From: Macrostomum lignano
Taxonomy: Eukaryota
Assembly (NCBI GenBank): GCA_002269645.1
Contig: NIVC01001454.1
Location: 1 to 64,000 of the forward strand
Length of the DNA stretch: 64,000 nucleotides
Reading direction: 5' to 3'
The stretch's first letter is position 1, and every line of letters begins with the position of its first letter. The position numbers were made by a program, and so were the translations under genes. Shown here piece after piece: positions 20,701-53,428 of this stretch. Below the pieces are notes generated by a model that worked only from the letters and a program-made list of their open reading frames with translations, was not told where the DNA came from and ran no database searches.

Positions 20701-21769
20701 AACAGGGATGGACAGTCAGGTACAACAGGGATGGACAGTCAGGTACAACAGGGATGGACAGTCAGGTACAACAGGGATGGACAGTCAGGTACAACAGGGA
20801 TGGACAGTCAGGTACAACAGGAATAGACAGTCAGGTACACCATACGAGTAGATGTAGATTAGAGCGGGAACAAAGACTTGAGGATTGGAGGCAGACACGA
20901 AGAGCTAATTGAGCAACAAGTACAACGCATGTACCCCCCCTTTTTTATGCCGCAGGCGGACCGGTTCAACCCAATCGTACTCAAAGTACTATTCCGAATG
21001 TTTGCACCTTCGATTCTGCTAAGCGTGTCCTTGAAATTATTCTACGACCTGTTGAACTTTTCCGGCACACTCATATTGAAGGCCATACTGAAATATTTGC
21101 AATCCGGTGCTGTGTACGAATGGCGCGGCTATTTCTATGTTGGCCTGATATTCCTAGCTGGTCTAGTTCAGACAGCCATCCTGCATCAGTACTTTCACAT
21201 CGTATTCGTGCTGGGCATGCAGATTCGAACTAGTTTAGTGTGCGCCGTGTATAACAAATCATTGAAACTGTCTAATCAGGCTAGAAAAACAACTACAACT
21301 GGTTCTATTGTCAATCTAATGTCGGTTGATTCGTTCAAATTTCAAGAGCTGATGTCCTATATTAACATATTGTGGTCAGGCCCGCTGCAGATTGTTATCT
21401 GTTTAGTGCTGCTCTACCAAGAGCTGGGTCCGTCTATCTTTGCTGGCGTAGCCGTGCTCATTATACTGATCCCAATTAACGGCGTCCTGGCCAAGTATAT
21501 GAAACAGTTTCAAGTGGAACAGATGGAGCTCAAGGATACGAGGATTAAAATGATAAGCGAAATACTGGCCGGTATTCGAGTTATTAAACTGTACGCCTGG
21601 GAGCTGGCGTTTGCTCAACAGGTAAGGGGGGTAAGTGGCTGCGGATAGACAGACAGGCAGACTTACAGACACACAGACAGACAGAGACAGACAGACAGAT
21701 CAGACAGATCAGACACACAGACAGATCAGACAGACAGACAGATCAGACAGACAGACACACAGACAGATC

Positions 21770-21808
<39 letters not shown>

Positions 21809-21962
21809 TCAGACAGATCAGACACACAGACAGATCAGACAGATCAGACAGATCAGACACACAGACAGATCAGACAGACAGACACACAGACAGATCAGAC
21901 AGACAGACAGACAGACAGATCAGACAGACAGACACACAGACAGATCAGACAGACAGACAGGC

Positions 21963-21993
<31 letters not shown>

Positions 21994-24900
21994 TCAGACA
22001 GATCAGACACACAGACAGATCAGACAGATCAGACAGATCAGACACACAGACAGATCAGACAGACAGACACACAGACAGATCAGACAGACAGACACACAGA
22101 CAGATCAGACACACAGACAGATCAGACAGACAGACAGACAGATCAGACACACAGACAGATCAGACAGACAGACACACAGAGCACAGACAGATCAGACAGA
22201 CAGACAGATCAGACAGACAGACACACAGACAGATCAGACAGACAGACAGGCAGACAGACAGACAGACGGGCACTAAGACGGACAGGCAGACAGACAGACA
22301 GACAGACAGACAGATCAGACAGATCAGACACACAGACAGATCAGACAGATCAGACAGATCAGACACACAGACAGATCAGACAGACAGACAGACACACAGA
22401 CAGATCAGACACACAGACAGATCAGACAGACAGACAGATCAGACACACAGACAGATCAGACAGACAGACACACAGACAGATCAGACAGACAGACACTAAG
22501 ACAGACAGGCAGACAGGCAGACAGACAGACAGACAGACAGGCAGGCAGACAGACAGACAGACAGACAGACAGGCTGACAGACAGACAGACAGACAGATAG
22601 GACACAGGCGTACAGCACACATGCAGGCAGAAAGAAGAACAGAAAACAGCAGACAGACAGCGGACAGAACAAGATATATCAGGTCAGTCTGACAATAAAG
22701 GTAGCTCGTATAACTGATAGCAGCAGGTGCAGCAGCCTAAACCGTCCTCAGCACTACGCCCCCCCCTACCTACTCGCAGGTCAGCGCCACTCGCAAAAAA
22801 GAAATCGCCGTGATGCGTCGTTCGGCCTTCCTTAATGCCGGTATCTCGTTTGCCTGGAGCTGCACCCCTGTGCTGGTGTCTCTGGCTACGTTCTCGGTGT
22901 ACACACTCAGTTCGCCGGATAACATCCTCGACGCTGAGAAGTGCTTCGTATCTATATCGCTATTTAATCTGTTGCGTTTTCCTTTGGCTATACTGCCTAT
23001 GGTGGCTAATTCTACTGTGGAATGCACCGTGTCTTTGAAGAGGCTGACCAACTTTTTAACGTTGGACGAGCTTGATAAGTGAGTTTGCGTGACTGAGTGA
23101 GGGGTGAGATAGTGACTGAGATAGGAGTGAGATAGTGATTGAGTTAGTGGTGAGATAGTGACTGAGTTAGGGGTGAGATAGTGACTGAGTTAGGGGTGAG
23201 ATAGTGACTGAGTTAGGGGTGAGATAGTGACTGAGTTAGGGGTGAGATAGTGACTGAGTTAGGGGTGAGATAGTGACTGAGTTTAGGGTGAGATAGTGAC
23301 TGAGTTAGGGGTGAGATAGTGACTGAGTTAGGGGTGAGATAGTGACTGAGTTAGGGGTGAGATAGTGACTGAGTTAGGGGTGAGATAGTGACTGAGTTAG
23401 GGGTGAGGTAGTGACTGAGTTAGGGGTGAGGTAGTGACTGAGTTAGGGGTGAGACAGTGACTGAGTTAGGGGTGAGATAGTGACTGAGTTAGGGGTGAGG
23501 TAGTGACTGAGTTAGGGGTGAGATAGTGACTGAGTTAGGGGTGAGATAGTGACTGAGTTAGAGGTGAGATAGTGACTGAGTTAGGGGTGAGATAGTGACT
23601 GAGTTAGGGGTGAGGTAGTGACTGAGTTAGGGGTGAGATATATAGTGATTGAGTTTAGGGTGAGATAGTGACTGAGTTAGCGATGAGATAGTGACTGAGT
23701 TAGGGGTGAGATAGTGACTGAGTTAGGGGTGAGATAGTGACTGAGTTAGGGGTGAGATAGTGACTGAGTTAGCAACCACTTTCGTTGGTACAATGCAAAT
23801 GCGGGGTGACGCAGTGATTTGAGCGACTTCTTCAAAATGAGATGATTTATTGATTCACCAAATTTTCACCCTTACGCAGACGAGCTGTGAAGCGCCGACC
23901 GGAGCAGAAAGCCGCTCTTCGAATCGAGTCAGGCAAATTCAGCTGGGATGGGCCGAGCGGAGCGCCAACTCTCTCTGACGTCAATCTGGAGATTGAAGAC
24001 GGCTCGCTTATTGCCATTGTTGGCACAGTTGGTGCCGGCAAAAGCTCGCTGTTAAATGCGCTGCTAGGCTACATAACAAAGCTGGATGGCACAGTGTTGA
24101 TTAAAGGCTCGCTAGCCTACTTCAGCCAGGAGCCGTTCATACAGAACCTGAGCCTGCGCGATAATGTACTGTTTAATTCGCCGATGCACGAGAATCTATA
24201 TCGTCAAGTGATTGACTGCTGCGCTTTGGAACGGGATCTGGAGATTCTGCAGGCCGGTGATATGACTGAGATTGGCGAGAAGGGTATTACCCTGTCCGGT
24301 GGGCAGAAGGCTCGCGTGTCTCTGGCTAGGTAAAAAGAAAATCATGCTAAAAATGTTTTAAATTGCTGTACTTTTAGTAGGCTAATTGATGTTTACAAGT
24401 ATTTTTATTTCCGTCAACTACTTATAGTAGGCTAATTGATTATCAGAAGTGTATTCATGTAGGTAAACTACGACTACTTTTAGTAGGCTATTTGATATTT
24501 TGTTGAAATAATCAAGCAAACTACTTAAAGTAAACTACGAATATAAGCTTTTTTGGTGTATTCAAGCAAACTACTTGCAGTAGACTATAAGGTTTTTATT
24601 GAAATAATTAAGCAAACTACTTTAGTAAATAAATCGATTTTTATTGGTATATACGAGTCAACTACTTGTAAGTAGAATAAAAGGCTTTTTTTAATATTCA
24701 AGCAAACTACTTATAGTAGGCTATAAGGTTTTATAGAACTATTTTATAAAACTTTCTATCCCTACATCACATTTCTATTAACAAAGAGCCTGCTACGCTG
24801 ACAAAGACATCTACCTGTTGGACGACCCATTATCAGCCGTTGACGTACACGTTGGCAAGCACATATTCGAACGCGTCATCAGCTCAGAGACCGGCCTATT

Positions 24901-26393
24901 GAGCCGTAAGACTCGCGTCCTAGTAACGCACTCATTGACCTATCTGCCCAGGGTGGATCGGATTGTTGTCCTGAACGACGGCCGGGTGTCCGAGATTGGC
25001 ACGTTTCGCGAATTAGTCAAAGCCGACGGACCATTTGCCAAGCTGATTAGTGAGTTCTTGGCCAGTCACAGTCACCATGCTCACGCCACTACAAATTACT
25101 CAGCCACCGCTGTCCCCGACTCAACCAACGCTGAACCGAGCGCTGCTCCGCCAGTTGAAGATGTCGACACTGTGCTCAATATATTGGACGAAATTCAGAA
25201 AGAAGAAATGGAAAAAGAGGGAGCTGTAGAAGAAAGCAAAGATGAAGCTGTTGCTGGCGTTGACAATGCCGATTCTCTGGCTGCGGCCGCTCTGAATAGT
25301 GTTCAGCTACTGCCAGATGATGTCGCCGCTAATGAGACCGACGCCGCCAAGGCGCCTCTGCTAGCTACTAGCGTCGGTAGTAGCAATGGTCCAATTGCTG
25401 ATAAGACTGCAGGTTTGTAGTGCTGATAGGGATGGCAGCGACTGGGTGTGGCACCGGGGAGAAAAACAAGAGACTGGGTGTGGCACCGGGGGGGGTGCGC
25501 GCCAGAGACTGAGTGTGGCACCGGAGAGAAACACACCAGAGACTGGGTGTGGCACCGGGGGGGGGACGCCAGAGACTGAGTGTGGCACCGGGGAGAAACA
25601 CACCAGAGACTGGGTGTGGCACCGGGGGGGACGCCAGAGACTGAGTGTGGCACCGGGGAGAAACACACACGAGACTGGGTGTGGCACCGGGGGGGGGCGC
25701 CAGAGACTGGGTGTGGCACCGGGTGGGGGACGCCAGAGACTGGGTGTGGCACCGGGGGGGGGGCGCCAGAGACTGGGTGTGGTACCGGGGGGGGCGCCAG
25801 AGACTGGGTGTGGTACCGGGGGGGGGGCGCCAGAGACTGGGTGTGGCACCAGGGGGGGGCGCCAGAGACTGGGTGTGGCACCGGGGGGGGGGGCGCCAGA
25901 GACTGGGTGTGGCACCCATGGAAAAATTGAGGTCGAAGCAAGCAATACTAAGGCCAGTTGACACCCTGCTAACCGAATTTACAGACGCCAGTAAGAAGAA
26001 TCTCGAAGGCGCCCCCGCTGCGAACGCGCTATTCAGAACCACAGACGAGGAGAAATCTAAAACTGGCCGGGTGAACTGGCGTGTCTATCTGACTTATTTC
26101 CGCGCTGTTGGACTGCTCTTCTGCCTGGGCGTTGTCATCACCTACATTCTCGCTCACGGCCTGTCCCTGGGCTCCAACTTCTGGCTGGTGGACTGGACTG
26201 ACGACGCCAGGCGGATTGCGCAATTCAATGGAAGCAGCAGTCGCGGCGGCGGAGTCAACGGCACAACAGTTGCGCCGCCGGCTGAGAGCTGGAGCCGGCC
26301 GCAGCGGATTGGCATTCTGGCTGCGTTTGGCTTGCTGCAAGGTGAGCCAGCTCTGGGGCTGAGTCTGACCGATGGCGTAGATAGATAGGTAGG

Positions 26394-26440
<47 letters not shown>

Positions 26441-26499
26441 GTAGATGGATAGATTGATAGATAGATAGGTAGATGGATAGATGGATAGATGGATAGATG

Positions 26500-26545
<46 letters not shown>

Positions 26546-26546
26546 T

Positions 26547-26584
<38 letters not shown>

Positions 26585-26601
26585 CAGATAGATAGATAGA
26601 C

Positions 26602-26651
<50 letters not shown>

Positions 26652-26685
26652 ATGATTGATAGATAGATAGATAGATAGGTAGATG

Positions 26686-26755
<70 letters not shown>

Positions 26756-26793
26756 CAGATAGGTAGATGGATAGATGGATAGATGGATAGATG

Positions 26794-26831
<38 letters not shown>

Positions 26832-26832
26832 T

Positions 26833-26874
<42 letters not shown>

Positions 26875-26960
26875 CAGATAGATAGATAGATAGATAGATA
26901 GGTAGATGGATAGATTGATAGATAGATAGGTAGATGGATAGATGGATAGATGGATAGATG

Positions 26961-26998
<38 letters not shown>

Positions 26999-26999
26999 T

Positions 27000-27037
<38 letters not shown>

Positions 27038-27038
27038 T

Positions 27039-27076
<38 letters not shown>

Positions 27077-27093
27077 CAGATAGATAGATAGAC

Positions 27094-27155
<62 letters not shown>

Positions 27156-27189
27156 ATGATTGATAGATAGATAGATAGATAGGTAGATG

Positions 27190-27259
<70 letters not shown>

Positions 27260-27324
27260 CAGATAGGTAGATGGATAGATGGATAGATGGATAGATGGAT
27301 AGATAGACAGATAGATAGATAGAC

Positions 27325-27386
<62 letters not shown>

Positions 27387-27417
27387 ATGATTGATAGATA
27401 GATAGATTGATAGATAG

Positions 27418-27494
<77 letters not shown>

Positions 27495-30400
27495 GGTGGG
27501 TAGATTGGTAGCTAGGTAGGTAGCTGGATAAGTTGATTGATTGAGTGATTGATTGATAGACACAGATACATAAGCAAAGTTTCAAGACCTTTTAACTGCT
27601 CTATACATATATATTGTTTTTCTAAGCAAGCGTTTGTTTCTAATGATCATAAAAAGTAGATTCATTTATTTAATAAAGCATTACATCGGTACTACTACAC
27701 TGTTACCGTGTAGAATGTGTCAGCTTTTGTATCATAGAGCTCAGTGCCCAGCCAATGCCATAACCGTACCAATGCACTATACATGAACAGGCTTTGCCGA
27801 ATGCATTGGGGCCGTACAGTGCGCCTTCAGCGCCACCCTGGCATCTGTGCACCTGCACCAAAACCTGCTCAATTCGTTGCTAAGCTGGCCAGCTTTGCGT
27901 TTCTCTGCCAGCATTTTGAGTGGCCCAATCATAACCAGATTCAGTGCAGATCTAGACGAAGTAGATCTTGTACTGCCATTCACTTTGAGATCTCTGGCTA
28001 ACAGCCTGATTCAGTTGGTTGGCATTGGCATTGTCATTGCCACTTTATTCTACCTGCCAGCCCTAGCCGTTTGTCTTTCAGTAGCTGTGTTCTATTATTT
28101 CATACAAGTGAGTATTTATTTATGCCAAGGTCCTGCACGCGTGATCAGAGAGTGCCAAACAAGTAGCCAGATTATATTATATAACCTAAAATCAATTGCA
28201 ATTTTAATAATGACTTTGCGCTAATCAACAAAGTTAACGGGGTGTCTTGTTCTCTACATGCATTTGTCGTTTGTAATACTTTGTGTGTGTATTTTCTAGG
28301 CAAAAGTCTGTTGACTCTGTCTACTTACGAGTATATAAGTTATTTGAAAGTATGTAATTTAAAAAAATGCAAGATGCAATATTTTCTCATCTGCTTAAGC
28401 TACCCTAATTTTCGATGATAATGTAAAATTTCGCATGTAAATGTTTGGTTTAGAACGCGTGTACTTTGCTACGGGTATGCTTTGGTACGTGTGTACTTTG
28501 GTATATCTGTTGTTTAGTTCTAAACCAACGTATAGTACATGTACTTTAGTACATGCACCTTAATTTGTATGTACTTTGGTACGTATGTGCTTCAATTCGT
28601 ATGTATTTTATTACGCATTTACTTTAGTACGTATGTACTTAATTACGCGTGTACTTTAGTACGTATGTACTTTAGTACGTATGTACTTTAGTACGTATGT
28701 ACTTTAGTACGTATGTACTTTAGTACGTATGTACTTTAGTACGTATGTACTTTAGTACGTATGTACTTTAGTACGTATGTACTTTCGTACCCATGTACTT
28801 TAGTGTGTTTGTATATTTAGGTAGGTAATAACTGTTACGAGTATTGATAGATGTCCCTGTGAGGTTCAAAAACCCTAAACTAGCCTACTTGTAAGTAGAA
28901 TAATCGGAGCATAAAAAAATATGCTGTTGCAGCCAGTCACGCAGCCGTCGGTATGCTTGGCATTTGGCTGTGCGCCACACACGCATCTCGTCAACTGCAC
29001 TCTGATCTGTTGCGCTCGCTGTTACGCCAGCCTGTTCACGCGCACGAATTACGCGCCTGCGGCAGGACTATTAACGTATTCTCTGGCGACGTGTCTCGCC
29101 TAGACATTGCCATGCCGCGTCGATGGAAATGGGTTGTACAGAGCTGCTTCTGGGTTGCGGAAAATTTTGTCGGTTTAACGACCGTGTCGGCGCTGAGATT
29201 GTCGCCGGCTCTGCTGCCGATCGGTCTTGCCTTGTGCGCACCTTTCTGCCTTGTACAGGTGGCCGGGGTAGAGCGCATAACAATTGCATAGCAGCATCCC
29301 ATGGATTATAGTTGCTATATTGAAGCTGCGCAACAGCAGTGCTAATTGATTTTGATTCTGATTTTCTAGCTAAAGCGCTGAAAAGGGGTATTTTTTCCAG
29401 TACTAAAACGCAAAACGCATTTTTTCATAGTTGGTTATCGCTTATCTTAAAAATAGTGCAGAGTAATCTCAGACCTACAAATATAGCTGTTCTTCAGGTT
29501 GGGCCTCTATCCTTCAAATTTGATCTCTATTCTTCAGATTTGATCTCTATCCTTCAGCTTTGATCTCTATCCTTCACATTTGATCTCTATCCTTCAAATT
29601 TGATCTCTATCCTTCAGCTTTGATCTCTATCCTTCACATTTGATCTCTATCCTTCAAATTTGATCTCTATCCTTCAAATTTGATCTCTATCCTTCAGGTT
29701 TGATCTCTATCCTTCACATTTGATCTCTATCCTTCAAATTTGATCTCTATCCTTCAGGTTTGATCTCTATCCTTCAGATTGGATCTCTATCCTTCAAATT
29801 TGATCTCTATTCTTCAGTTTGACCTCCCTCCATCCTTCAGGTAGGACCTCTATCCTTCAGGTTGGACCTCTATCCTTCAGATTGGATCTCTATCCTTCAG
29901 ATTTGATCTTTATTCTTCAGGTTTGATCTCTATCCTTCAGATTGGATCTCTATCCTTCAAATTTGATCTCTATCCTTCAGGTTTGATCTCTATCCTTCAG
30001 GTTTGATCTCTATCCTTCAGATTGGATCTCTATCCTTCAGATTTGATCTCTATCCTTCAGGTTTGATCTCTATCCTTCAGGTTGGGCCTCTATCCTTCAG
30101 GTCGGACCTCTATCCTTCAGGTCGGACCTCTATCCTTCAGGTTGGGCCTCTATCCTTCAGGTCGGACCTCTATCCTTCAGGTCGGACCTCTATCCTTCAG
30201 GTTGGGCCTCTATCCTTCAGGTCGGACCTCTATCCTTCAGGTTGGGCCTCTATCCTTCAGGTCGGACCTCTATCCTTCAGGTTGGGCCTCTATCCTTCAG
30301 GTTGGACCTCTATCCTTCAGGTTGGACCTCTATCCTTCAGATTTGATCTCTATCCTTCAGGTTTGATCTCTATCCTTCAGGTTGGGCCTCTATCCTTCAG

Positions 30401-33400
30401 GTCGGACCTCTATCCTTCAGGTCGGACCTCTATCCTTCAGGTTGGGCCTCTATCCTTCAGGTCGGACATCTATCCTTCAGGTTGGGCCTCTATCCTTCAG
30501 GTCGGACCTCTATCCTTTAGGTTGGGCCTCTATCCTTCAGGTCGGACCTCTATCCTTCAGGTTGGGCCTCTATCCTTCAGGTCGGACCTCTATCCTTTAG
30601 GTTGGGCCTCTATCCTTCAGGTCGGACCTCTATCCTTCAGGTTGGGCCTCTATCCTTCAGGTCGGACCTGTAGCCGTTTTTAGGTTTCACTTTTATCCTT
30701 CAGTTTTAAAAAATAAAAAAATGGAAATTAATTTGTGAAAAATAATAACATCACGCAGCTTTTTGGTTAGCAATGTTTTTCGCCTATTCTAAATTCGATT
30801 CCAAGCAATTGCTAAATTAACGAATACGCTCGTAAATTCGAAGTGATTACAAAAGCGCAATACACGCCAATGCAAACCACCCGCCCAAACAAAACGCAGC
30901 GCTAGCGATCTTCTGGGGCGCATTTATTTCTTCGATCGCCTGTCTGAGAGCGTCCCGCCTATTGCACAACAACCTGTTGAACCGGGTGTTAGCCTGCATG
31001 CTAACATTCTTCGAATCGACCCCGCTGGGCCGCATCGTGAATCGATTTAGCAGCGACGTGAATTGCGTCGATCGCGATTTGGCCGAGAAGTGGCGCACCA
31101 TGCTTCGTATTGCCTTCTGGCTATTGGAGGCTCTTATTGCCGTGTCCTTCGCGTTGCCATGGTTTCTAGTGGCTCTAATTGGCATTGCCGCAATGTTCCA
31201 TGGCGTTCAGGTCTTTATTTATACTTTTAGTTGGTTTTGCGTGGTGTCGTGTTTTTGTCTCTTAACTCTTGTTGTGCACTGGTAATTATGGAAGACAAAA
31301 CGCAAATGCATGCGGGGTACACGCGCACCCCGTTGCTTTCACCAGCTAATTCATATTAAAAATCAATAATTTTGCTTAACCTTGCAATATAAACAATATA
31401 ACCTCTTATGTTGCTTGCCTTAGTTATTGATTGTTGTGGCTTTTTGTGTTTTTAATTTTGTGTATAGTAATGCAATTTTTTTTTGCTTGGTACACAGATT
31501 TTATATTACGAGCGTATTGTTATATACTTTGCCAATGCGTAACCTTTACTCTTCAGTTAGCTTATTTTATGTACTTTATTACACGTACTTTAGTACGCAT
31601 GTACTTTAGTACGCATGTACTTTAGTACGCATGTACTGTAGTACGCATGTACTTTAGTACGCATGTACTTTAGTACGCATGTACTTTAGTACGCATGTAC
31701 TTTAGTACGCATGTACTTTAGTACGCATGTACTTTAGTACGCATGTACTTTAGTACGCATGTACTTTAGTACGCATGTACTTTAGTACGTATGTACTTTA
31801 GTACGCATGTACTTTAAAGTTTGATATTATTTCGTTATTTTCTGAAGTATTTCTCTGGCCTACCTTTCTTCCGCTCCCATCCGACTATCCAGCCATAGCC
31901 GTTCTCATGTCGCAGTTTCTAACAGCCGTCGGCGGCACCCGCGCCTCCGTTGCCCTTTACTGGGGCCTGCTGGCCAACCTACTAAAATCGCCTGTTGTCG
32001 CTCTTGTATCTCCAGACGATGGCAAAGGCGGCGGACGAACTGTTGGCAGCGAATTCTTGCAGCGCTTTGCCGACGATCTGGCCTCGGTTGATGCCGAGAT
32101 GGCGTTGGCCTGCCGATATCTGATTCAGGCCGCCTGCGGACTGCTGGAACGGGCCGCGGTGCTGTGCCAGCTGGATGTCAGCCTGTTGCTGGCTCTGCTG
32201 GCGGGCATTGCTGCCCTGCTGTTTGTACAGGTGGCCGTGTACCCGCACAGCGTTTTTAGTCCTCCGTAGATTTAATTATCTTGTCTTGTCTGGACAATTT
32301 TATTTATTTTACTATGATGATTAACCACTAATTATTGGATTTTCAGCTACTTTTCTGGTACGTTTCAACTTCAACTGTTTTTTGCGCACTGCATCTGCAA
32401 TCAATCTAGCCTTGATTTTATACCAACTTTTTGTGCTCGTATATATTTTGTTTCTGCTAGAACTCACTTCCCCAGTGTTCTGAATTGCCCGCTGACTCAC
32501 TTCCCCAGAATTCTGAATTCCCCGCTGGCTCACTTCCCCAGTGTTCTGAATTCCCCGCTGGCTCACTTCCCCAGTGTTCTGAATTGCCCGCTGGCTCACT
32601 TCCCCAGAATTCTGAATTCCCCGCTGGCTCACTTCCCCAGTGTTCTGAATTGCCCGCTGGCTCACTTCCCCAGAATTCTGAATTCCCCGCTGGCTCACTT
32701 CCCCAGAATTCTGAATTCCCCGCTGACTCACTTCCCCAGAATTCTGAATTGCCCGCTGGCTCACTTCCCCAGAATTCTGAATTCCCCGCTGGCTCACTTC
32801 CCCAGTGTTCTGAATTGCCCGCTGGCTCACTTCCCCAGTGTTCTGAATTGCCCGCTGACTCACTTCCCCAGAATTCTGAATTGCCCGCTGACTCACTTCC
32901 CCAGTGTTCTGAATTGCCCGCTGACTCACTTCCCCAGTGTTCTGAATTCCCCGCTGGCTCACTTCCCCAGTGTTCTGAATTGCCCGCTGACTCACTTCCC
33001 CAGTGTTCTGAATTGCCCGCTGGCTCACTTCCCCAGTGTTCTGAATTGCCCGCTGGCTCACTTCCCCAGAATTCTGAATTCCCCGCTGACTCACTTCCCC
33101 AGAATTCTGAATTCCCCGCTGGCTCACTTCCCCAGTGTTCTGAATTGCCCGCTGACTCACTTCCCCAGTGTTCTGAATTCCCCGCTGGCTCACTTCCCCA
33201 GAATTCTGAATTCCCCGCTGGCTCACTTCCCCAGTGTTCTGAATTCCCCGCTGACTCACTTCCCCAGAATTCTGAATTCCCCGCTGACTCACTTCCCCAG
33301 AATTCTGAATTCCCCGCTGGCTCACTTCCCCAGAATTCTGAATTGCCCGCTGGCTCACTTCCCCAGTGTTCTGAATTGCCCGCTGGCTCACTTCCCCAGT

Positions 33401-36400
33401 GTTCTGAATTCCCCGCTGGCTCACTTCCCCAGTGTTCTGAATTGCCCGCTGGCTCACTTCCCCAGAATTCTGAATTGCCCGCTGGCTCACTTCCCCAGAA
33501 TTCTGAATTGCCCGCTGGCTCACTTCCCCAGAATTCTGAATTCCCCGCTGACTCACTTCCCCAGAATTCTGAATTGCCCGCTGACTCACTTCCCCAGTGT
33601 TCTGAATTACCTGCTGAATTCCTTAGTCTGAACTCTGTACCAGCTCACCAATTTTTCAGCTCCGCTATCTTGTGTTAATTCCGCCGTCTCAATTCCCTAC
33701 ACTTTGTGTTTTAACTAATAATAGATCGAATGATGCTCTTTTGTTGCTAGGCCATGTTCCCATAGCAACTAACTGAAGCTTGCATGTAGTTGGTTAGACC
33801 ACAGCATTGATAAACAGCATCTGCTTCATCTGTCGCTCCCCAATCGCAGAGAATCTTCATCAGCTCATCCCGGCAGCTGAAGCGGCTGGAATCAACGGCC
33901 AAGTCGCCGATTTTCTCCCACTTCTCCGAGACCCTGTCTGGCGTGACCACTATTCGGGCATTCGAACAGCAATCGAATTTCAAACGAATCTGCAACGATC
34001 GCGTTAATTTTTTCAATCGCTGCTATTATCCGAATATTAGTTCGAATAGGTGGCTGGCCGTCCGGTTGGAGCTGGTTGGCAATCTGATTGTCACATTCAC
34101 CTGTCTGTTTGGCGTGCTGGCCAGGGGCACCGTGTCCCCTGGTCTAGTAGGTCTGGCCGCTATCTATGCGCTCAACGTTACCCAGAGCCTGAATTGGCTG
34201 ATCCGAATGACTTCGGAGTTGGAGACTAATATTGTTGCCGTGGAGAGGTGAGAATTCATTTTTATCTTATCCCATTTCAGGGATCTTAAGCTCCCTGAAT
34301 CCCTATGTGCTTAGGATCCTCATGCTTAGAATTTCCAACCTCTAATCCCCATCTTAAGATCTCATGCTTATAACCCGTGTAGAAGTCAGAGCGAGTGAAT
34401 CCTTGGAAGTAGCGAGTACTTAGCGGGAAAACCACCGATGAAATCAACTTTTTTTACACGGTAGCGCGTTTTTGCCAATTTTGTCACTCGCTATCAAAAA
34501 AACGCGCTGGCTCACGGTCAAATACGCGGTGGTTTTCACGGTGAGAGCTCTCTCGCTGCTTGACTCGATGGACAACTCGCTAGCCGCTTCACTCACTCCC
34601 TCATTCTCTCGCTAATTCTCTCGCTACTGTTACTCGCTCATTCTCTCGCTACTGCTACTCGCTCATTCTCTCGCTACTGTTACTCGCTCATTCTCTCGCT
34701 ACTGTTACTCGCTCATTCTCTCGCTTGTAGTCTCGCTAATTCTGTCGGTGTACAAATAATATATTATATATATTATAATAAATATATAATAATTAAAAAT
34801 ATAATAATAATAAAATTAATATTATAATATTAATCTTAATATTATTCATAATATTATATTATTCATAATATTAATATTATTATTAAAAAAATTAATAATA
34901 TTTTTAATTATTATTAATTATTATTATTATATATATATAATATATATTCGAGCAACAAGCTCGAAGACCAGTCGAAGTCAAACGGTAAGTCACGCGGAGG
35001 CCGATCAGTTACTGCGGCCGTTGTCCGCGGCGACGGCAACGTGGGCTAGACGGTCGGTGCCGGTACCAATTTTTCGGCTTCCGTTATATAGAGAAAGAGC
35101 AAGACAGCAATTATAACTCTCTTAAAACAAAAACTTATAACTCTCTACTTTCTAGCTACTTTAGAAGAATGCATAACTGCGTAGTAGTTTTTGGTTTCGG
35201 TAGTTTGCTATAGTTTTAGTTTTCGAGTAAATGTAAAGTAGTTTTTGTTTTTTTGGCCAAAAAAGTTTTGGCAACTGGTCAACTATGAAAAAACAGTAAC
35301 TGCAAAAAACAACTGAAAATGTTACAATCCTTCAATGTAGTCTCCCCCTCTCTCAATGCACTTTTGGTGCCGCCGAATCCATGCTTCGAATGCGCCATGG
35401 TACTCAGAAGCAGGTATGGCCTTCAGTTCTGAATTGATGCACTTAGCCAGGTCCTGGCATCGGTGAAAATTCCGTTCTGCCAGCCGTTCAGTCAGCTTGG
35501 CGAGCACCCAGAAGTCGCAGGGAGCCAAGTCAGGACTGTAGGGTGGGTGGCGGATGGTCTTGATGTTGTTGGCTGCCAGAAAGTTGGTCGTCAGGGCCGC
35601 TGTGTGACTGGACGCATTGTCATGGTGCAGGTGAACTCGCCCAGCTTGAAGCCGTGAGGGCTGAGTTGCGTGAAGTGACGCCATGACTTGTGGCAGAACC
35701 GTACCGGAGTAGAAGCTGGCGTTCACATTCTGTCCATTAGGCACCATGATGACGGCCACGGGCCCAGATGTGCTGATGAAGATGATGAACATCTCCTTCC
35801 GGGACCGAAAGCTGGACCGCAGGACAGTCGGCCTCGCGTCTCCAGAGCCCACCCAGGCCTTGTTCTTCATCTTCTGGGGCACTTGAAAGTAAAAGAACCA
35901 TTTCTCATCACCTGTAACGACGTCGGAAAGCCTCTGGCAGCCTCCTGGACCGAAGTTGCGCAGGAATTCCTGGCTGCACCGCACCCTCTCCCTCTTCTGC
36001 TCTTCTGTCAGGAGGTGGGGCACCCAGCGGGCGGTGACCTTGCGGAGGCCCAGGTGGCTGTGCAGGATGGTGTGCGCACTGCCATCGGAAATACCGACAG
36101 TCTCGCTAATCACAGCGACGGTAATGTTTGGATCCTCGTCCACCAGAGCCCTGACAGCAGCGATGTTGGCTTCGGTCACAGCTGTGCTGGGTCGTCCAGA
36201 CCGGGGGTCGTCGTTCAAGGAGGCCCGTCTGGCGTTGATGGACTCTATCCACCTGGCGACCGTGCGGTAGGAAGGGGCTTGGTCCCCGACTACCTGGACC
36301 AGGTCTGCATGGATTTTGACCGCGCTTTCTCCGAGTCGTGAGCGCATGAAAACGTAGAATCGCCACTGGTCTGGTTGCACTGGCTCCATTTTTGGCAGAG

Positions 36401-38495
36401 TCTAAAACACCACCTTGCGTTGGCCACGCGCAAGTATAACACATTCGAGGGAAAAAAGTCATACTCTATGGTTAAAACCAATGTCTGCGAATTCGTAAAA
36501 AATTTCAACGCTTTGTGATATGTACTTTTGGAGATATTAGGTCAGTTGCCAAAACTTTTTGAATGCCCCTCGTAGTATACGTTCTGGTGCTTTTCTTTAT
36601 CATTTTTTTCGTACAAATCCTTACAAGGCGCCCCATAAATGTCATCTTTATGAATTTACCGTACAAAGCCGTACAAGAAGGCGCCGTATAATGTCATCTT
36701 CATGAATATCAGTACTATTTCCAGCTTTAAGCCATAAATATACTGTACCGTTTGAACCAATTTAATATACACAAGTAATTAAATGGTGTGCATACTTCAT
36801 ATGAAAAATCGAGCGCCGTTTTGAGCGCGAAACTGCGGCATCCGGTGAGCTAAGCCACTGCATTTCTATTGTATAAGCGCGTCAAGTCTAGAGATGGGAA
36901 ATGAGCGAGAGAATGAGCGAGTAACAGTAGCGAGAGAATGAGCGAGTAGCAGTAGCGAGAGAATGAGCGAGTAACAGTAGCGAGAGAATGAGCGAGTAAC
37001 AGTAGCGAGAGAATGAGCGAGTAACAGTAGCGAGAGAATGAGCGAGTAACAGTAGCGAGAGAATGAGCGAGTAACAGTAGCGAGAGAATGAGCGAGTAAC
37101 AGTAGCGAGAGAATGAGCGAGTAACAGTAGCGAGAGAATGAGCGAGTAACAGTAGCGAGAGAATGAGCGAGTAACAGTAGCGAGAGAATGAGCGAGTGCA
37201 GGGACATAAACTCGGTGTATTTGGCACGCTCTTTGAATTTTTTTTGAGCGCGTTAACTCGCTCTAACTTTTACACGGGAACTCCCCATGATTATAATCCC
37301 TAACTTTAGATCCCATTCTTAGAATACCTATCTTTCGATCCCTTGCTTGCTTAGAATCGTCATGCTTATAACCCTTATCTTTAGATCCCCATTTTTATAA
37401 TCCCCATGCTTGGAATCCCCATCTTTATATCCCCATGATTATAATCCCCAGCTTTAGATCCCCATGCTTATTATCCCCATCTTTGGATCCCCTGCTTAGA
37501 ATCCCCATCTTTAGATCCCTTGCTTAGAATCCCCATCTTTAGATTCTATGCTTAGAATCCCCATCTTTATATCTTCATGCTTGAAATCCCTATCTTTAGA
37601 TTCCCTCTCACTCATAAATGCATGCTAGAAGCCCATCTATGTTGTCCCCATAGTGCAACACACAATCCGCCCGCACTGCAGAATCAAGGAGTACTCCGAG
37701 CTGGAGCAGGAGGCCCCTTGGCAACGGCCAGACGAGCCGCCCCTACCAGACGGCTGGCCCCTGGGCGGCGTCAGCTTTCGCAGCTTCGCCTGTCGCTACC
37801 GAGACGACCTGCCGCCGGCCCTGGCCGACATCAACCTGGAGGTCAGCCCCGGCCAGCGGGTCGGCATCGTGGGTCGCACCGGGTCAGGCAAGAGCACCCT
37901 GACCCTGTCGCTGTTCCGTGTGCTGGAGCCCCGGTCCGGCCAGCTGCTGCTAGACGGCGTTGACGTGACCAAACTCGGCCTGCACACGCTGCGGACTAGG
38001 ATCACCCTGATACCGCAGGACCCCCTGCTGTTCGCCGGCAGTCTGCGCTGGAATCTCGATCCGTTCGATCGGCACACTGACGACGAGGTCTGGTCGGCGT
38101 TGGAGACGGCTCACCTGAAGAGCTGGGCCTCCGGCTTGGAGACCGGGCTGAGCCACCCCATCTCGGAGGGCGGAGCGAACCTGTCGCTTGGCCAGCGCCA
38201 GCTGGTCTGTCTAGCGCGAGCTCTGCTTCGCCGCAGCCGCCTGCTCGTACTGGACGAAGCCACCGCTGCCGTTGACGTTGGCACCGACGCTCTGATTCAG
38301 CGCACGATCAGGGAGAAATTCTCTGACGCCACCTTGATCACTGTGGCTCATCGGCTGAATACGGTGATGGACTACGATAAGATTGTTGTACTAGAGCAAG
38401 GTCGCGTGCTCGAGTCCGGCTCGCCTAGCGAACTGTTGGCTAACAAAACGTCCGTGTTCTACGAGATGGCTCTGCAAGCGGGATTGGCTAAGTGA
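14727..38495 (+). CDS. Long-form ABCC/MRP1-like ABC exporter (TMD0-L0-TMD1-NBD1-TMD2-NBD2), about 1655-1664 aa; join(14727..14765,14858..15058,16153..16266,17484..17615,18265..18825,20956..21621,22780..23078,23880..24329,24787..25412,25985..26341,[one of A-D],33850..34247,37682..38495)
   Basis: All listed introns are GT-AG with matching phases. TMD0 motif [13 protein letters not shown] (MRP1 TWNTSNPDFTKCF); L0 [16 protein letters not shown]; NBD1 [26 protein letters not shown]; NBD2 [26 protein letters not shown]. The exon-10 acceptor (25985) is the least certain; an in-phase alternative AG lies about 27 nt upstream. Confidence 0.95.
15165..16025. repeat. 40-bp minisatellite (CTGACTGACTCACTGACCAACTGACAAGTCTAGTTGTAGR)n, ABCC intron 2
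   Basis: Period 40. Confidence 0.95.
16540..17390. repeat. 16-bp C-rich minisatellite (CCCCACACTCCATRTT)n, ABCC intron 3
   Basis: Direct reading; source of many spurious ORFs. Confidence 0.93.
17745..18028. repeat. 14/15-bp tandem repeat (CTGGCAAATGTCTAG / CTGGCAAACGTCGG), ABCC intron 4
   Basis: Direct reading. Confidence 0.9.
18860..20835. repeat. Compound minisatellite (19-bp ACAGGGATAGACAGGTCCA and 23-bp ACAACAGGGATGGACAGTCAGGT units), ABCC intron 5
   Basis: Direct reading; contains an internal duplication of about 550-570 bp. Confidence 0.93.
21645..22600. repeat. (CAGA)n/(CAGAT) microsatellite, ABCC intron 6
   Basis: Direct reading. Confidence 0.96.
23088..23772. repeat. 23-bp minisatellite (GAGATAGTGACTGAGTTAGGGGT)n, ABCC intron 7
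   Basis: Period 23; one TTAGGG per unit. Confidence 0.95.
25432..25917. repeat. About 30-bp G-tract minisatellite (GCCAGAGACTGGGTGTGGCACCG7-10), ABCC intron 9
   Basis: Direct reading. Confidence 0.92.
26378..27500. repeat. (GATA)n microsatellite with higher-order variant blocks, ABCC intron 10
   Basis: Direct reading. Confidence 0.97.
27791..28107 (+). CDS. ABCC alternative exon A (317 nt)
   Basis: aacag|GC ... CAA|gtgagt; encodes (G)[30 protein letters not shown]...[12 protein letters not shown]...YYFIQ. Confidence 0.88.
28620..28800. repeat. 16-bp array (TTTAGTACGTATGTAC)n, intron A-B
   Basis: About 9 near-perfect copies plus degenerate copies upstream. Confidence 0.93.
28933..29258 (+). 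CDS. ABCC alternative exon B (326 nt)
   Basis: ttgcag|CC ... CAG|gtggcc; encodes (A)[30 protein letters not shown]...[12 protein letters not shown]...FCLVQ. Confidence 0.85.
29495..30668. repeat. 20-bp minisatellite (TCTATCCTTCAGGTYGGRCC and variants), intron B-C
   Basis: Period 20; sequence drifts gradually along the array. Confidence 0.95.
30900..31210 (+). CDS. ABCC alternative exon C (311 nt), closest to canonical MRP1
   Basis: acgcag|CG ... CAG|gtcttt; encodes (A)[26 protein letters not shown]...[22 protein letters not shown]...FHGVQ. Confidence 0.92.
31585..31815. repeat. 16-bp array (TTTAGTACGCATGTAC)n, intron C-D
   Basis: About 14 copies; unit differs by one base from the A-B array. 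Confidence 0.94.
31893..32230 (+). CDS. ABCC alternative exon D (338 nt)
   Basis: atccag|CC ... CAG|gtggcc; encodes (A)[26 protein letters not shown]...[12 protein letters not shown]...LLFVQ. Confidence 0.83.
32461..33612. repeat. 33-bp minisatellite (CCCGCTGRCTCACTTCCCCAGWRTTCTGAATTS)n, intron after exon D
   Basis: Period 33; explains the 11-aa-repeat ORFs on both strands. Confidence 0.95.
35260..36572 (-). mobile_element. Mariner (Tc1/mariner, DD34D) element; right TIR complete, left TIR truncated
   Basis: Right end CAGTTGCCAAAACTTTTTGAATGCCCCTCG followed by TA at 36573-36574. Only the inner 18 bp (AAAAAGTTTTGGCAACTG, 35260-35277) recur inverted at the left. Confidence 0.88.
35322..36389 (-). 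CDS. Intact mariner transposase, 355 aa
   Basis: N-terminal HTH with PRSGRP, WVPHLL linker, TGDEKW, HHDNA and YSPDLAPCD; 34 residues between the second and third catalytic Asp. Confidence 0.96.
   Translation of the reverse strand: MEPVQPDQWRFYVFMRSRLGESAVKIHADLVQVVGDQAPSYRTVARWIESINARRASLNDDPRSGRPSTAVTEANIAAVRALVDEDPNITVAVISETVGISDGSAHTILHSHLGLRKVTARWVPHLLTEEQKRERVRCSQEFLRNFGPGGCQRLSDVVTGDEKWFFYFQVPQKMKNKAWVGSGDARPTVLRSSFRSRKEMFIIFISTSGPVAVIMVPNGQNVNASFYSGTVLPQVMASLHATQPSRLQAGRVHLHHDNASSHTAALTTNFLAANNIKTIRHPPYSPDLAPCDFWVLAKLTERLAERNFHRCQDLAKCINSELKAIPASEYHGAFEAWIRRHQKCIERGGDYIEGL
37283..37600. repeat. Degenerate about 14-bp repeat (CCCCATCTTTAGAT-like), also present left of the TIR element (about 34270-34373)
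   Basis: Same motif on both sides of 34374-37278, so it is the likely insertion target. Confidence 0.7.
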
Positions 38496-52200: not shown

Positions 52201-53428
52201 GCTGCTCGGCATCACCCTCATCGGAGTGCTGGCCTATCAGATGTTTCAATTGTTTGGCGCGTCCGCTGAGCAAGGCGTTTTTATGGCACTGCGAATCATC
52301 GAGGGCCTGCTCTCGATTGGGCAGAGCGTTTTCCAGGTGAGAGTCAGATAAAAAATGAATACTATATATGTCAGTTAGTAGCACTATGCTACTTATAGCT
52401 ATTAGGGCTTCAGGCACTGCCGAAATTCAATTGGCGACAGTTGATGCCCTTTTACTTGTGAATCCCTGGGCTGGCACACACTCACACAGGGTGTTACAGC
52501 GGCCTTGTTCTCATTGAGCATTTCTCGTTCGGCAGTGTACTCAGTCTCTTGGTTGGGACACAGTCTCTTGGTTAGAGACGCTGTCTCATGGTTGTGGGCG
52601 CTGTATCTTGGTTGGGGACGCTGTATCTTGGTTGGGGACGCTGTATCTTGGTTGGGGACGCTGTATCTTGGTTGGGGACGCTGTATCTTGGTTGGGGACG
52701 CTGTATCTTGGTTGGGGACGCTGTATCTTGGTTGGGGACGCTGTATCTTGGTTGGGGACGCTGTATCTTGGTTGGGGACGCTGTATCTTGGTTGGGGACG
52801 CTGTATCTTGGTTGGGGACGCTGTATCTTGGTTGGGGACGCTGTATCTTGGTTGGGGACGCTGTATCTTGGTTGGGGACGCTGTATCTTTTTTTTGGGCG
52901 CTGTATCAAAAATGTCCTGTTGCTGACGCTGTCCCAACATGCCCCATCAATAAAAATCCTGGCTACGCTCCTGCTAGCACCGCGACCGCAAATCTCACTA
53001 ATAATGCGCTCACTGCAATCCTTCTACGCTCATAGGTCTACCTGGTTCTCGACGGTGAAAAGCGTCGCTCTAAAAGTGACGAAGTCATCGAGGAGAAGCC
53101 CGGCCGAGAGATGATTGCCGCCTTACTGCTGGGCAACATCGCCCAGTGGATTGTGTACACGTTGGAGATACGCGAGATCAACAATCTGCCAAACTACAGT
53201 CACGCCTACGTACCAGTCGCGTCGAACATCTTTGCCTACGTGTGCTCGCCGCTGATCATCTTCTTCCGGTTCCATTCGGCCTGCTGTTTCGTGGAAATTT
53301 GGCGAACAGCTTACAAAGGAAGAAAGCGTCGATGTCAGAGTCATCCGGACCTGACCGTGTGCTCAACTGTTCCAGGCAGTGTGAGCGCTCTGCAGGATTC
53401 TTCGACTAAGTCGAACAGTCAGGCTTGA
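49253..53428 (+). CDS. Otopetrin-family proton channel, about 816 aa; join(49253..49855,50289..50330,50448..50560,50939..51458,51557..52336,53036..53428)
   Basis: Family motifs LLYAMGLTLFGFVFPL, GFYIILYLVS, SFFLRVACFIFG, LQTFFLF, GFMHLLATNMCVW, PYLFPFTIEY, KPGREMIAALLLGNIAQW and FFRFHS; all junctions GT-AG and phase-compatible. Confidence 0.93.
49908..50140. repeat. 44-bp tandem repeat, about 5 copies, otopetrin intron 1
   Basis: Period 44 (49921 and 49965); head-to-tail with no spacers. Confidence 0.95.
52595..52890. repeat. 20-bp minisatellite (CTGTATCTTGGTTGGGGACG)n, otopetrin intron 5
   Basis: Period 20, near-perfect copies. Confidence 0.96.

What the first reader, a model, noticed from the sequence alone, without database searches (positions are those of the whole stretch)
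27791..32230. Four-way mutually exclusive exon cassette diversifying TMD2 of an MRP1-type ABCC exporter
Seen: between constitutive exon 10 (ends phase 1 at 26341) and exon 12 (starts phase 0 at 33850, [15 protein letters not shown]) lie four homologous exons: A 317, B 326, C 311 and D 338 nt. All are AG/GT-bounded, stop-free and of length 3n+2. All have exactly 18 residues from the split codon through the conserved AS motif (the same spacing as human MRP1), all keep L..LL..L, F..D....D and a basic residue 8 positions later, and all end in Gln. Including none or two shifts the frame, so one exon per functional mRNA is enforced. The four peptides are highly diverged yet structurally conserved, which argues for selection rather than decay. 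Established: Drosophila MRP1 has mutually exclusive exon clusters, one in the C-terminal membrane domain. Inference: a comparable, possibly convergent isoform system in a non-insect, giving four transporter isoforms from one gene.
Basis: partly seen in the sequence, partly recalled or inferred. Interest (0 to 1): 0.92.

Follow-up and report, generated by a model that had tools for sequence, protein, structure and literature searches.

The report
Four alternative exons in flatworm MRP1
A flatworm (Macrostomum lignano-type) MRP1/ABCC1 drug-pump gene carries four tandem, very diverged copies of one membrane-domain exon, built so that only one can be used per mRNA; this kind of exon array is already known in MRP genes of insects, nematodes and other phyla.

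Summary
Four homologous exons lie between 26341 and 33850: A 27791-28107, B 28933-29258, C 30900-31210 and D 31893-32230. All are AG/GT-bounded, open, and 3n+2 long. Each is a significant homologue of the same ABCC segment (family HMM: C 102, A 62, B 48, D 26 bits; shuffles at most 11). Only single-exon inclusion gives a full open reading frame; 0, 2, 3 or 4 exons give a premature stop.

The gene is an intact MRP1-type transporter, and the nearest database protein is from Macrostomum lignano. The mutually exclusive exon (MXE) reading is the best explanation, but it rests on sequence logic alone; I could reach no transcript data. C is canonical. A, B and D have lost near-invariant coupling-helix residues.

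Novelty is modest. C. elegans mrp-1 has four such exons and insect MRP has 7-8, and these overlap the same protein segment with different exon boundaries. Yue et al. 2017 reported independent MRP exon duplications across phyla.

New here is one strong intronic inverted repeat (28229-28271 / 31300-31340), which is a candidate RNA pairing.

Verdict: a new member of a known kind, of moderate-to-low interest.

The parts
25985..26341 (+). Its 3' end at 26341 is in phase 1. The acceptor at 25985 is inferred.
   Evidence: ORF and homology to ABCC2/MRP1. Donor CAAG|gtgagc. Acceptor chosen by phase from the upstream donor.
27791..28107 (+). Variable exon A (317 nt, 106 aa including the split codon). 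It has the strongest donor of the four (GTGAGT).
   Evidence: Family HMM 62.3 bits (40). Pfam ABC_membrane 29.3 bits (27). tblastn hit from P0002 at 2e-12 (29).
28933..29258 (+). Variable exon B (326 nt, 109 aa). Donor GTGGCC. Five extra residues in the TM14-TM15 part.
   Evidence: Family HMM 48.3 bits (40). Pfam 32.2 bits (27).
30900..31210 (+). Variable exon C (311 nt, 104 aa), the canonical version ([18 protein letters not shown]). It is present in the database model P0001.
   Evidence: Family HMM 102.2 bits (40). Gap-free alignment to ABCC2 1036-1139 (26).
31893..32230 (+). Variable exon D (338 nt, 113 aa), the most diverged. It has a 9-residue insertion in the coupling-helix loop. Donor GTGGCC.
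   Evidence: Family HMM 26.0 bits against a shuffle maximum of 4.6 (40). No Pfam hit (27). Part of it is included in P0001 (9).
33850..34247 (+).
37682..38495 (+). Last exon (NBD2 and the stop codon).
28229..28271 (+). Intronic element 'downA', about 120 nt downstream of exon A. It is one arm of a long-range inverted repeat.
   Evidence: (I4).
31300..31340 (+). Intronic element 'X', about 90 nt downstream of exon C. It is complementary to downA and, more weakly, to the 5' splice-site region of exon D. It is a candidate docking-type element.
   Evidence: Duplex with downA -45.5 kcal/mol, reached by 0 of 1000 shuffles. The linked construct folds at -46.2, z -8.4. The motif occurs only twice in 64 kb, on opposite strands.
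32229..32256 (+). Exon D donor region, complementary to X. The support is marginal.
   Evidence: Duplex -33.1 kcal/mol, reached by 9 of 1000 shuffles (48, 49). The repeat finder pair I19 (31).
28449..28813 (+). 16-mer tandem array (GTACTTTAGTACGTAT)n, ending about 120 nt upstream of exon B.
   Evidence: Predicted long hairpin, -123 kcal/mol, z -11.5 (70).
31565..31817 (+). Second copy of the same 16-mer array, ending about 76 nt upstream of exon D.
   Evidence: Predicted hairpin, -106 kcal/mol, z -6.9 (71).

Best explanation
This is a tandem-duplicated, mutually exclusive alternative-exon cluster ('exon 11a-d') in the MRP1/ABCC1-type gene of Macrostomum lignano or a very close relative.

Each exon encodes the same module of TMD2: the cytoplasmic end of TM13, the intracellular loop with the coupling-helix motif, TM14, and the start of TM15. 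This corresponds to about human MRP1 residues 1027-1130.

Shown:
- There are four homologous, open, splice-site-bounded exons.
- Entry is in phase 1, exit is in phase 0, and the 3n+2 length means only one-exon mRNAs keep the reading frame.
- The rest of the gene is intact.

Inferred:
- One exon is spliced in per mRNA. Mis-spliced products (0, 2, 3 or 4 exons) carry premature stops upstream of the last junction and would be removed by nonsense-mediated decay.
- C gives the canonical transporter.
- A, B and D give isoforms with an altered TMD2-NBD coupling loop and an altered TM14. The change includes the position of the MRP1 H-pocket residue M1093, which is S, W, T and Y in A, B, C and D.
- The duplications arose within the flatworm lineage, independently of the insect and nematode MRP clusters.
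- Exon choice may be helped by long-range RNA pairing between element X (downstream of C) and downA (downstream of A), and perhaps the donor of D. This step is the least secure (about 0.3).
For: Exon anatomy and motifs.

Homology of each exon to the ABCC segment. Exactly four copies.

Only single inclusion is in frame.

Against neutral decay:
- The open-frame probabilities of 0.015, 0.0625 and 0.024 multiply to about 2e-5 (42).
- All length differences are multiples of 3, and the alignment stays in one frame from end to end at only 24-30% identity (6, 30).
- The exons are GC-rich islands (0.49-0.61) in introns of 0.31-0.50 (42).
- The family-wide residues G44, F50, D53 and D58 are kept in all four (69).
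- The hydropathy pattern is kept (76).

In-lineage origin:
- Glu at C-position 77 is shared by B, C and D. Thr at position 16 is shared by A, B and D. Neither residue occurs in any of the 105 other ABCC sequences (69).
- Exon boundaries differ from the Anopheles cluster (7 exons of 186 nt, C-positions 13-74) and the Oesophagostomum cluster (156-nt exons, C-positions 53-104) (59, 36).

Gene identity: the best solved-structure matches are MRP1 (2e-200 for L0-TMD1-NBD1) and ABCC2/MRP1 for TMD2 (46, 26).

Precedent: C. elegans mrp-1 13A-D (PMC4165533); insect MRP (8 exons) and independent duplications across phyla (PMC6071210, PMC7434440, PMC9741552).

RNA pairing.
Against: - There is no transcript evidence. 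The protein collections hold nothing with A or B and no correctly spliced 10-C-12 product. The only locus-derived protein, P0001, is a model that fuses C with part of D.
- A, B and D have lost near-invariant residues: FFD, TP, and N of NRFS. D also carries a 9-residue insertion in the coupling loop (41, 76). All seven Anopheles variants keep that motif (59). The isoforms could therefore be impaired.
- The donors of B, C and D are weak (GTGGCC, GTCTTT) (44).
- No closer relative of exon A exists among 1.84 billion representative proteins. Apart from one partial match (52% over residues 47-105, P0204), the best matches are about 31-46% identical, the same as generic ABCC (79).
- RNA pairing: only X-downA is robust. 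X-B is not significant. GC-rich exon D gives gapped duplexes of similar energy elsewhere (51). Conservation could not be tested.
Confidence: 0.7

Rival explanations
1. Only exon C is used. A, B and D are relics of old exon duplications (pseudo-exons) that are skipped, or included only as noise.
For: C is by far the most canonical (102 bits against 62, 48 and 26). C is the exon found in the database model. A, B and D have lost near-invariant coupling-helix residues. B and D have weak donors. No A-, B- or D-containing protein exists in the collections.
Against: At 24-30% identity, neutral sequence should have stops and frameshifts. All three are open (joint chance about 2e-5). They stay in one frame with only 3n indels. 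They keep AG/GT at phase-preserving positions, the hydropathy pattern and the invariant residues G44, F50, D53 and D58. A has the best donor of the cluster. The absence of transcripts is uninformative, because constitutive junctions are absent from the collections too.
Confidence: 0.2
2. Variants are co-included in frame through alternative splice sites, as in database model P0001 (C plus a 336-nt version of D, 31916-32251). This would give a longer TMD2 with an extra helical hairpin rather than mutually exclusive isoforms.
For: P0001 has exactly this structure. The internal acceptor (tcgcag|TTT) and the downstream donor (CACAGC|gt) exist in the window.
Against: This is what an ab initio predictor produces when it tries to keep an ORF across tandem homologous exons. 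P0001 also carries frame-patching in exon 10 (one search compared). The homologous boundaries (AS at residues 18-19, terminal Gln) favour the full exons (6). A duplicated coupling loop has no precedent in ABCC proteins.
Confidence: 0.05
3. It is an assembly artefact: exons from separate gene copies or haplotypes were collapsed or interleaved into one locus.
For: M. lignano-type genomes are repeat-rich and partly duplicated (my own knowledge). Every intron here carries a tandem array.
Against: The four exons are only 24-30% identical, so they are not haplotypes or recent paralogues. They sit in the same orientation in one intron-sized interval. No other exon of the gene is duplicated. C, D and exon 12 occur in the same order in an independent database model.
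Confidence: 0.02

Closest known systems
C. elegans mrp-1 exons 13A-13D (four mutually exclusive exons; Kuroyanagi et al. 2014, PMC4165533); the same type is seen in Oesophagostomum dentatum (locus L001)
   Same: MRP1-type gene. Four tandem homologous exons. They encode TM14-TM15 of TMD2. The 3' boundary is the same intron position, immediately before R(I/F)(F/Y)..SRQLKRLES.
   Different: The nematode exons are 156 nt (3n), equal in length and 50-60% identical. They cover only the C-terminal half of the flatworm exon (C-positions 53-104). The flatworm exons are 311-338 nt, 3n+2, unequal in length and 24-30% identical, and they also include the coupling-helix loop. In the nematode the frame does not enforce exclusivity; here it does.
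Insect MRP (Drosophila Mrp, 8-exon cluster per PMC6071210; Anopheles sinensis locus L002 with 7 copies)
   Same: A tandem array of alternative exons in TMD2 of the MRP1 orthologue, covering the AS..LH..LL...FFD.TP.GR..NRFS.D..D loop.
   Different: The insect exons are 186 nt (3n) and span C-positions 13-74 with different boundaries on both sides. All copies keep the coupling-helix motif, whereas flatworm A, B and D do not. Competing RNA structures are documented for insects (PMC6071210, citing Yue et al. 2017). Here there is only one strong candidate pairing.
Independent MRP exon duplications across metazoan phyla (Yue et al. 2017, RNA Biol 14:1399; not held, known through PMC6071210 and PMC7434440 and from my memory of its abstract, which lists Platyhelminthes)
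   Same: The same gene family, the same phenomenon and the same proposed convergent origin.
   Different: I could not check whether this species or this cluster was in that survey. The 3n+2 frame lock, the unequal lengths and the extreme divergence may be particular to this case.
Frame-dependent MXE pairs backed by NMD (for example the 3n+1 and 3n+2 ME exons of C. elegans listed in PMC4165533)
   Same: Exon lengths that are not multiples of 3 make double inclusion or double skipping out of frame, so surveillance removes errors.
   Different: Those are mostly two-exon clusters. Here four exons share the property, and even four-fold inclusion hits a stop.

Membership tests
MRP1/ABCC1-type long ABCC transporter | TMD1-NBD1-TMD2-NBD2 core, with best similarity to MRP1/ABCC1-3 | tested here: met
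   PDB phmmer: MRP1 at 2e-200 for L0-TMD1-NBD1. ABCC2 at 4e-75 and MRP1 at 2e-71 for TMD2. NBD2 exon at 37682-38495.
MRP1/ABCC1-type long ABCC transporter | N-terminal TMD0 plus the L0 linker | tested here: inconclusive
   The L0 motif [18 protein letters not shown] aligns to MRP1 (domain 1). Candidate TMD0 ORFs at 14.86-17.66 kb resemble MRP1 TMD0 by eye only. No significant hit and no full exon model.
Tandem-duplicated mutually exclusive exon cluster | Two or more homologous exons in tandem, in the same orientation, between constitutive exons | tested here: met
Tandem-duplicated mutually exclusive exon cluster | Each variant alone preserves the reading frame with the same splice phases | tested here: met
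   A, B, C or D alone gives a full ORF. All other combinations give a premature stop.
Tequally-named cluster row placeholder | placeholder | not tested
   placeholder
Tandem-duplicated mutually exclusive exon cluster | Variants maintained by purifying selection | tested here: inconclusive
   Indirect support only: open frames (42), 3n indels (6), retained invariant residues (69), hydropathy (76). No orthologue or homeolog was available for dN/dS. Some invariant residues are lost (41).
Docking-site/selector competing RNA pairing (Dscam exon 6, 14-3-3zeta, insect MRP type) | One docking sequence complementary to a selector next to every variable exon | tested here: inconclusive
   X (31300-31340) pairs strongly with downA (reached by 0 of 1000 shuffles) and marginally with the D donor (9 of 1000). 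Pairing with B is not significant (106 of 1000). C has no selector because it hosts X.
Docking-site/selector competing RNA pairing (Dscam exon 6, 14-3-3zeta, insect MRP type) | Pairings conserved or covarying in related species, and required for exon choice | not testable with these tools
   No related Macrostomum genomic sequence is reachable, and no experiments are possible.
Same duplication event as the insect or nematode MRP clusters (orthologous cluster) | Shared exon boundaries and phases with those clusters | tested here: not met
   Flatworm exon covers C-positions 1-104 (phase 1 to 0). Anopheles covers 13-74 (186 nt). Oesophagostomum and C. elegans cover 53-104 (156 nt). Only the 3' intron position is shared with nematodes. 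Residues shared by three of the four flatworm exons occur in none of 105 other sequences (69).

The most novel reading that the evidence does not exclude
This is an independently evolved flatworm MXE cluster that differs from the insect and nematode MRP clusters in three ways. It swaps the whole TM13-end/coupling-helix/TM14/TM15-start module. It tolerates rewriting of the otherwise near-invariant FFD.TP.GRI.NRFS coupling motif in three of four variants, which would give isoforms with different TMD-NBD coupling as well as different substrate contacts. Its exon choice is steered by a docking-like element inside the cluster (X, downstream of C) that competes between a selector downstream of A and the donor of D.
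Probability: 0.3. Interest if true: 0.5.

Novelty: new member of a known kind. Interest (0 to 1): 0.33.

Why it matters
If all four exons are used, one gene gives four MRP1 isoforms. They would differ in the loop that couples the membrane domain to the ATPase domains and in a helix lining the substrate cavity. That is a compact way to widen detoxification or signalling-lipid export in a free-living flatworm that is a genetic model with transgenesis.

It would add a platyhelminth data point to the repeated, independent invention of exon arrays in the same segment of MRP genes. It would also offer a natural test of how much variation the ABC coupling helix tolerates.

On the practical side, the public gene model for this locus (P0001) is wrong in the typical way for MXE arrays. 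The Anopheles sinensis cluster is likewise split into three 'genes'.

This does not open a new question; the phenomenon is established.

Tried and rejected
- Transcript or isoform evidence through the protein collections. The query 10-C-12 and the query A+B+D returned only P0001. An exact look-up of P0001 found no contig. An exhaustive phmmer search with exon A against 1.84 billion representatives found only generic ABCC-level matches (about 31-46% identity, plus one 52% partial match). Its two top E-values (P0121, P0155) are spurious repeat proteins. Absence is therefore uninformative.
- Yue et al. 2017 could not be read. Searches for a platyhelminth or Macrostomum MXE report found nothing.
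- A conserved-column enrichment test was considered as proof of selection on A, B and D, then judged confounded, because the ancestor and C are themselves biased to the consensus. It is reported only descriptively.
- A docking-selector scan of all introns found that the best third-best energy (-21.8) is no better than the shuffle extreme (-21.1), so there is no hub pairing with three or more introns. The extension X2 (31341-31380) with the region downstream of B was not significant. A global duplex scan shows GC-rich exon D giving energies similar to X-downA, so energy alone is not proof.
- A two-step [A-B] to [C-D] duplication was suggested by the shared intron layout (inverted-repeat arm, 16-mer array, GTGGCCG donor). 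The exon identities do not support it; they are star-like around C.
- There is no second duplicated exon elsewhere in the gene.
- There are no Rfam families in the window.
- Structure prediction was not run. With a canonical family alignment it would impose the canonical fold and would not test function.


Full report
**Source and gene.** The window is eukaryotic, and nearly every intron carries a tandem array. The best database match to the spliced peptide exon10-C-exon12 is P0001, a UniRef protein of Macrostomum lignano (Platyhelminthes, Macrostomorpha). P0001 is identical to the window over exon C, most of exon D and exon 12.

The gene runs on the + strand from about 14.9 kb to the stop at 38495. 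Its L0-TMD1-NBD1 part matches solved MRP1 structures at 2e-200. The TMD2 part matches ABCC2 and MRP1 at 1e-75 to 1e-71. NBD2 is a single last exon, 37682-38495. The gene is an intact MRP1/ABCC1-type gene.

**Check of the observation.**
- Exon 10 ends at 26341 in phase 1.
- The exons are A 27791-28107 (317 nt), B 28933-29258 (326), C 30900-31210 (311) and D 31893-32230 (338).
- Each is bounded by AG and GT, open in the required frame and 3n+2 long.
- Exon 12 starts at 33850 in phase 0.
- All four peptides have AS at residues 18-19, L..LL..L, F..D....D, a basic residue eight positions later, and a final Gln.

The four are only 24-30% identical to each other, but each is a significant homologue of the same ABCC segment.
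- Against an HMM made from 105 ABCC proteins of other animals they score 102 (C), 62 (A), 48 (B) and 26 bits (D). The best of 500 shuffles per exon was 11.
- A, B and C pass Pfam ABC_membrane alone; D does not.
- A three-frame HMM scan of 14-39 kb finds these four copies and nothing else.
- No other exon of the gene is duplicated.

**Frame logic.** I built all 16 inclusion patterns. Only the four single-exon mRNAs give a full ORF. Skipping all four, any pair, any triple, and all four together each give a premature stop upstream of the last exon junction. Four-fold inclusion also fails, although its total length is in frame.

**Are A, B and D live exons or relics?** No transcript-derived protein from this locus exists in the collections I could search. 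That is true even for constitutive junctions, so absence says nothing.

The argument is therefore indirect:
- Divergence this large under neutrality should have produced stops and frameshifts. In dinucleotide shuffles the frame stays open with probability 0.015 (A), 0.0625 (B) and 0.024 (D).
- All length differences are multiples of three, and the alignment stays in one frame end to end.
- AG/GT sites sit at phase-preserving positions.
- The exons are GC-rich islands in AT-richer introns.
- The hydrophobic / loop / hydrophobic pattern matches the family consensus.
- The residues that are 94-100% conserved in the family (G44, F50, D53, D58) are kept in all four.

Two observations point the other way:
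- A, B and D have lost several near-invariant residues of the loop motif FFD.TP.GRI.NRFS, and D has a nine-residue insertion there.
- The donors of B, C and D are weak.

I put about 0.7 on a working MXE cluster with at least two used variants, and about 0.2 on 'only C is used'.

**What the exon encodes.** The isoform-C peptide aligns to human MRP1 (8vt4_A) as query 3-337 against residues 950-1263. In the printed ABCC2 alignment there are no gaps after the exon 10 insertion, so I assume the same for MRP1. On that basis the variable exon corresponds to about MRP1 1027-1130. This covers the end of TM13, the first intracellular loop of TMD2 with its coupling helix, TM14, and the start of TM15.

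- The invariant second Asp of F..D....D maps to D1084, and the basic residue to K1092. These residue identities are from my own knowledge of MRP1 mutagenesis.
- The next residue is M1093 (bovine M1092), the only leukotriene-C4 'H-pocket' contact in this segment (PMC8267652). It is S, W, T and Y in A, B, C and D.
- The variants would therefore change both NBD coupling and one cavity-lining position. This is inference.

**Comparison with known clusters.**
- C. elegans mrp-1 has four ME exons, 13A-D, of 156 nt each (PMC4165533).
- The Oesophagostomum protein P0012 and its locus L001 show the same 52-residue unit in tandem. It ends right before [15 protein letters not shown], which is the flatworm exon's 3' boundary, but it covers only C-positions 53-104.
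- In Anopheles sinensis (L002) I count seven tandem 186-nt exons covering C-positions 13-74. These correspond to the Drosophila MRP cluster of eight (PMC6071210), and all keep the coupling motif.

The flatworm exon spans both regions and has different boundaries and phase. In addition, three of the four flatworm exons share residues found in none of 105 other ABCC sequences: Glu at position 77 in B, C and D, and Thr at position 16 in A, B and D. This points to duplication within the flatworm lineage.

That agrees with Yue et al. [quoted passage not shown] From memory, their abstract lists Platyhelminthes, but I could not open the paper. The finding is therefore a new member of a known kind at most.

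**RNA structure.** I looked for docking/selector pairings.
- One pair stands out. A 43-nt element 120 nt downstream of A (28229-28271) and a 41-nt element 90 nt downstream of C (31300-31340) form an almost continuous duplex of -45.5 kcal/mol, which 0 of 1000 shuffles reached. An artificially linked construct folds at -46.2 kcal/mol, z -8.4.
- Its core motif AACGGGGTG-N-CATGCATTTG occurs only twice in the 64 kb, on opposite strands.
- Several differences between the arms are U-G wobbles on the sense strand (sense -45.6 against antisense -39.3 kcal/mol).
- The same element X is also complementary to the donor region of D (-33.1; 9 of 1000 shuffles). It is not significantly complementary to B.
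- A multi-partner scan gave nothing beyond chance. GC-rich exon D yields gapped duplexes of similar energy.

I therefore report one solid inverted repeat that would loop out exons B and C, and one marginal pairing that would mask the D donor. Their role in exon choice is a hypothesis (about 0.3).

**Other features of the cluster.** Introns A-B and C-D share a layout: an inverted-repeat arm, then a 16-mer array (GTACTTTAGTACGYAT)n found nowhere else in the window, then an exon whose donor reads TTGTACAG|GTGGCCG in both B and D. Both arrays are predicted to fold into long hairpins. Exon identities do not support a simple [A-B] to [C-D] duplication, so this layout is unexplained.

**Annotation artefacts.**
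- P0001 joins C to an internal acceptor of D (31916) and reads through the D donor to 32251 (VAVYPHS). This keeps an ORF across two homologous exons, which is the usual ab initio error on MXE arrays.
- In Anopheles sinensis the cluster is split among three gene calls.

**Verdict.** The claim of a surprising, first non-insect case is not supported. Interest is about 0.33.

Noticed in passing
window 28449-28813 and 31565-31817: A 16-mer tandem array (GTACTTTAGTACGYAT)n occurs only in introns A-B and C-D within the 64 kb. Both copies are on the same strand and end 120 and 76 nt upstream of exons B and D. Both are predicted to fold into long hairpins (z -11.5 and -6.9). Each unit contains GTATGT and TTTAG, which resemble splice sites.
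   Followed up: partly
window 29251-29265 and 32223-32237: Exons B and D share an identical 15-nt stretch, TTGTACAG|GTGGCCG, across the 5' splice site, although the exons are only 24% identical at the protein level.
   Followed up: partly
window 17000-45700: Essentially every intron of the ABCC gene holds a large tandem array: (TAGA)n of 1.1 kb at 26378-27494, a 20-mer at 29492-30669, a 33-mer at 32463-33616, (AGAC)n at 21647-22597, a 23-mer at 23089-23772, and others. The 33/65-mer array at 25429-25916 is open in the exon 10 frame but is most likely intronic.
   Followed up: partly
window 35322-36389 (- strand), inside the intron between exon 12 and the last exon: An intact 355-aa ORF with Mos1-type HTH_48, HTH_32 and DDE_3 domains. 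This is a mariner/Tc1-like transposase, antisense to the ABCC gene.
   Followed up: partly
P0001 (UniRef, Macrostomum lignano) compared with window 26240-26341 and 30900-32251: The public protein model fuses exon C with a 336-nt version of exon D through alternative sites. It also has a frame-patched stretch in exon 10 ([14 protein letters not shown] instead of [21 protein letters not shown]). This suggests indels in the source assembly, or a near-identical second copy.
   Followed up: partly
L002 (Anopheles sinensis KE525319.1) 1600-8100: Seven tandem 186-nt MRP variable exons are split among three separate gene calls (1-1822, 2420-5739, 6001-9430). This is a misannotation of the insect MXE cluster.
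   Followed up: partly
window 3642-5945 (+) and 50865-52348 (+): The neighbouring genes are a single 768-codon ORF with an MFS_1 domain upstream, and an otopetrin-family gene (two ORF segments) downstream of the ABCC gene.
   Followed up: partly
one search hits P0121 and P0155: The two best E-values of the exhaustive search with exon A are long repeat proteins with 15 and 5 weak stretches. They are not ABC transporters, so their scores are additive artefacts.
   Followed up: yes
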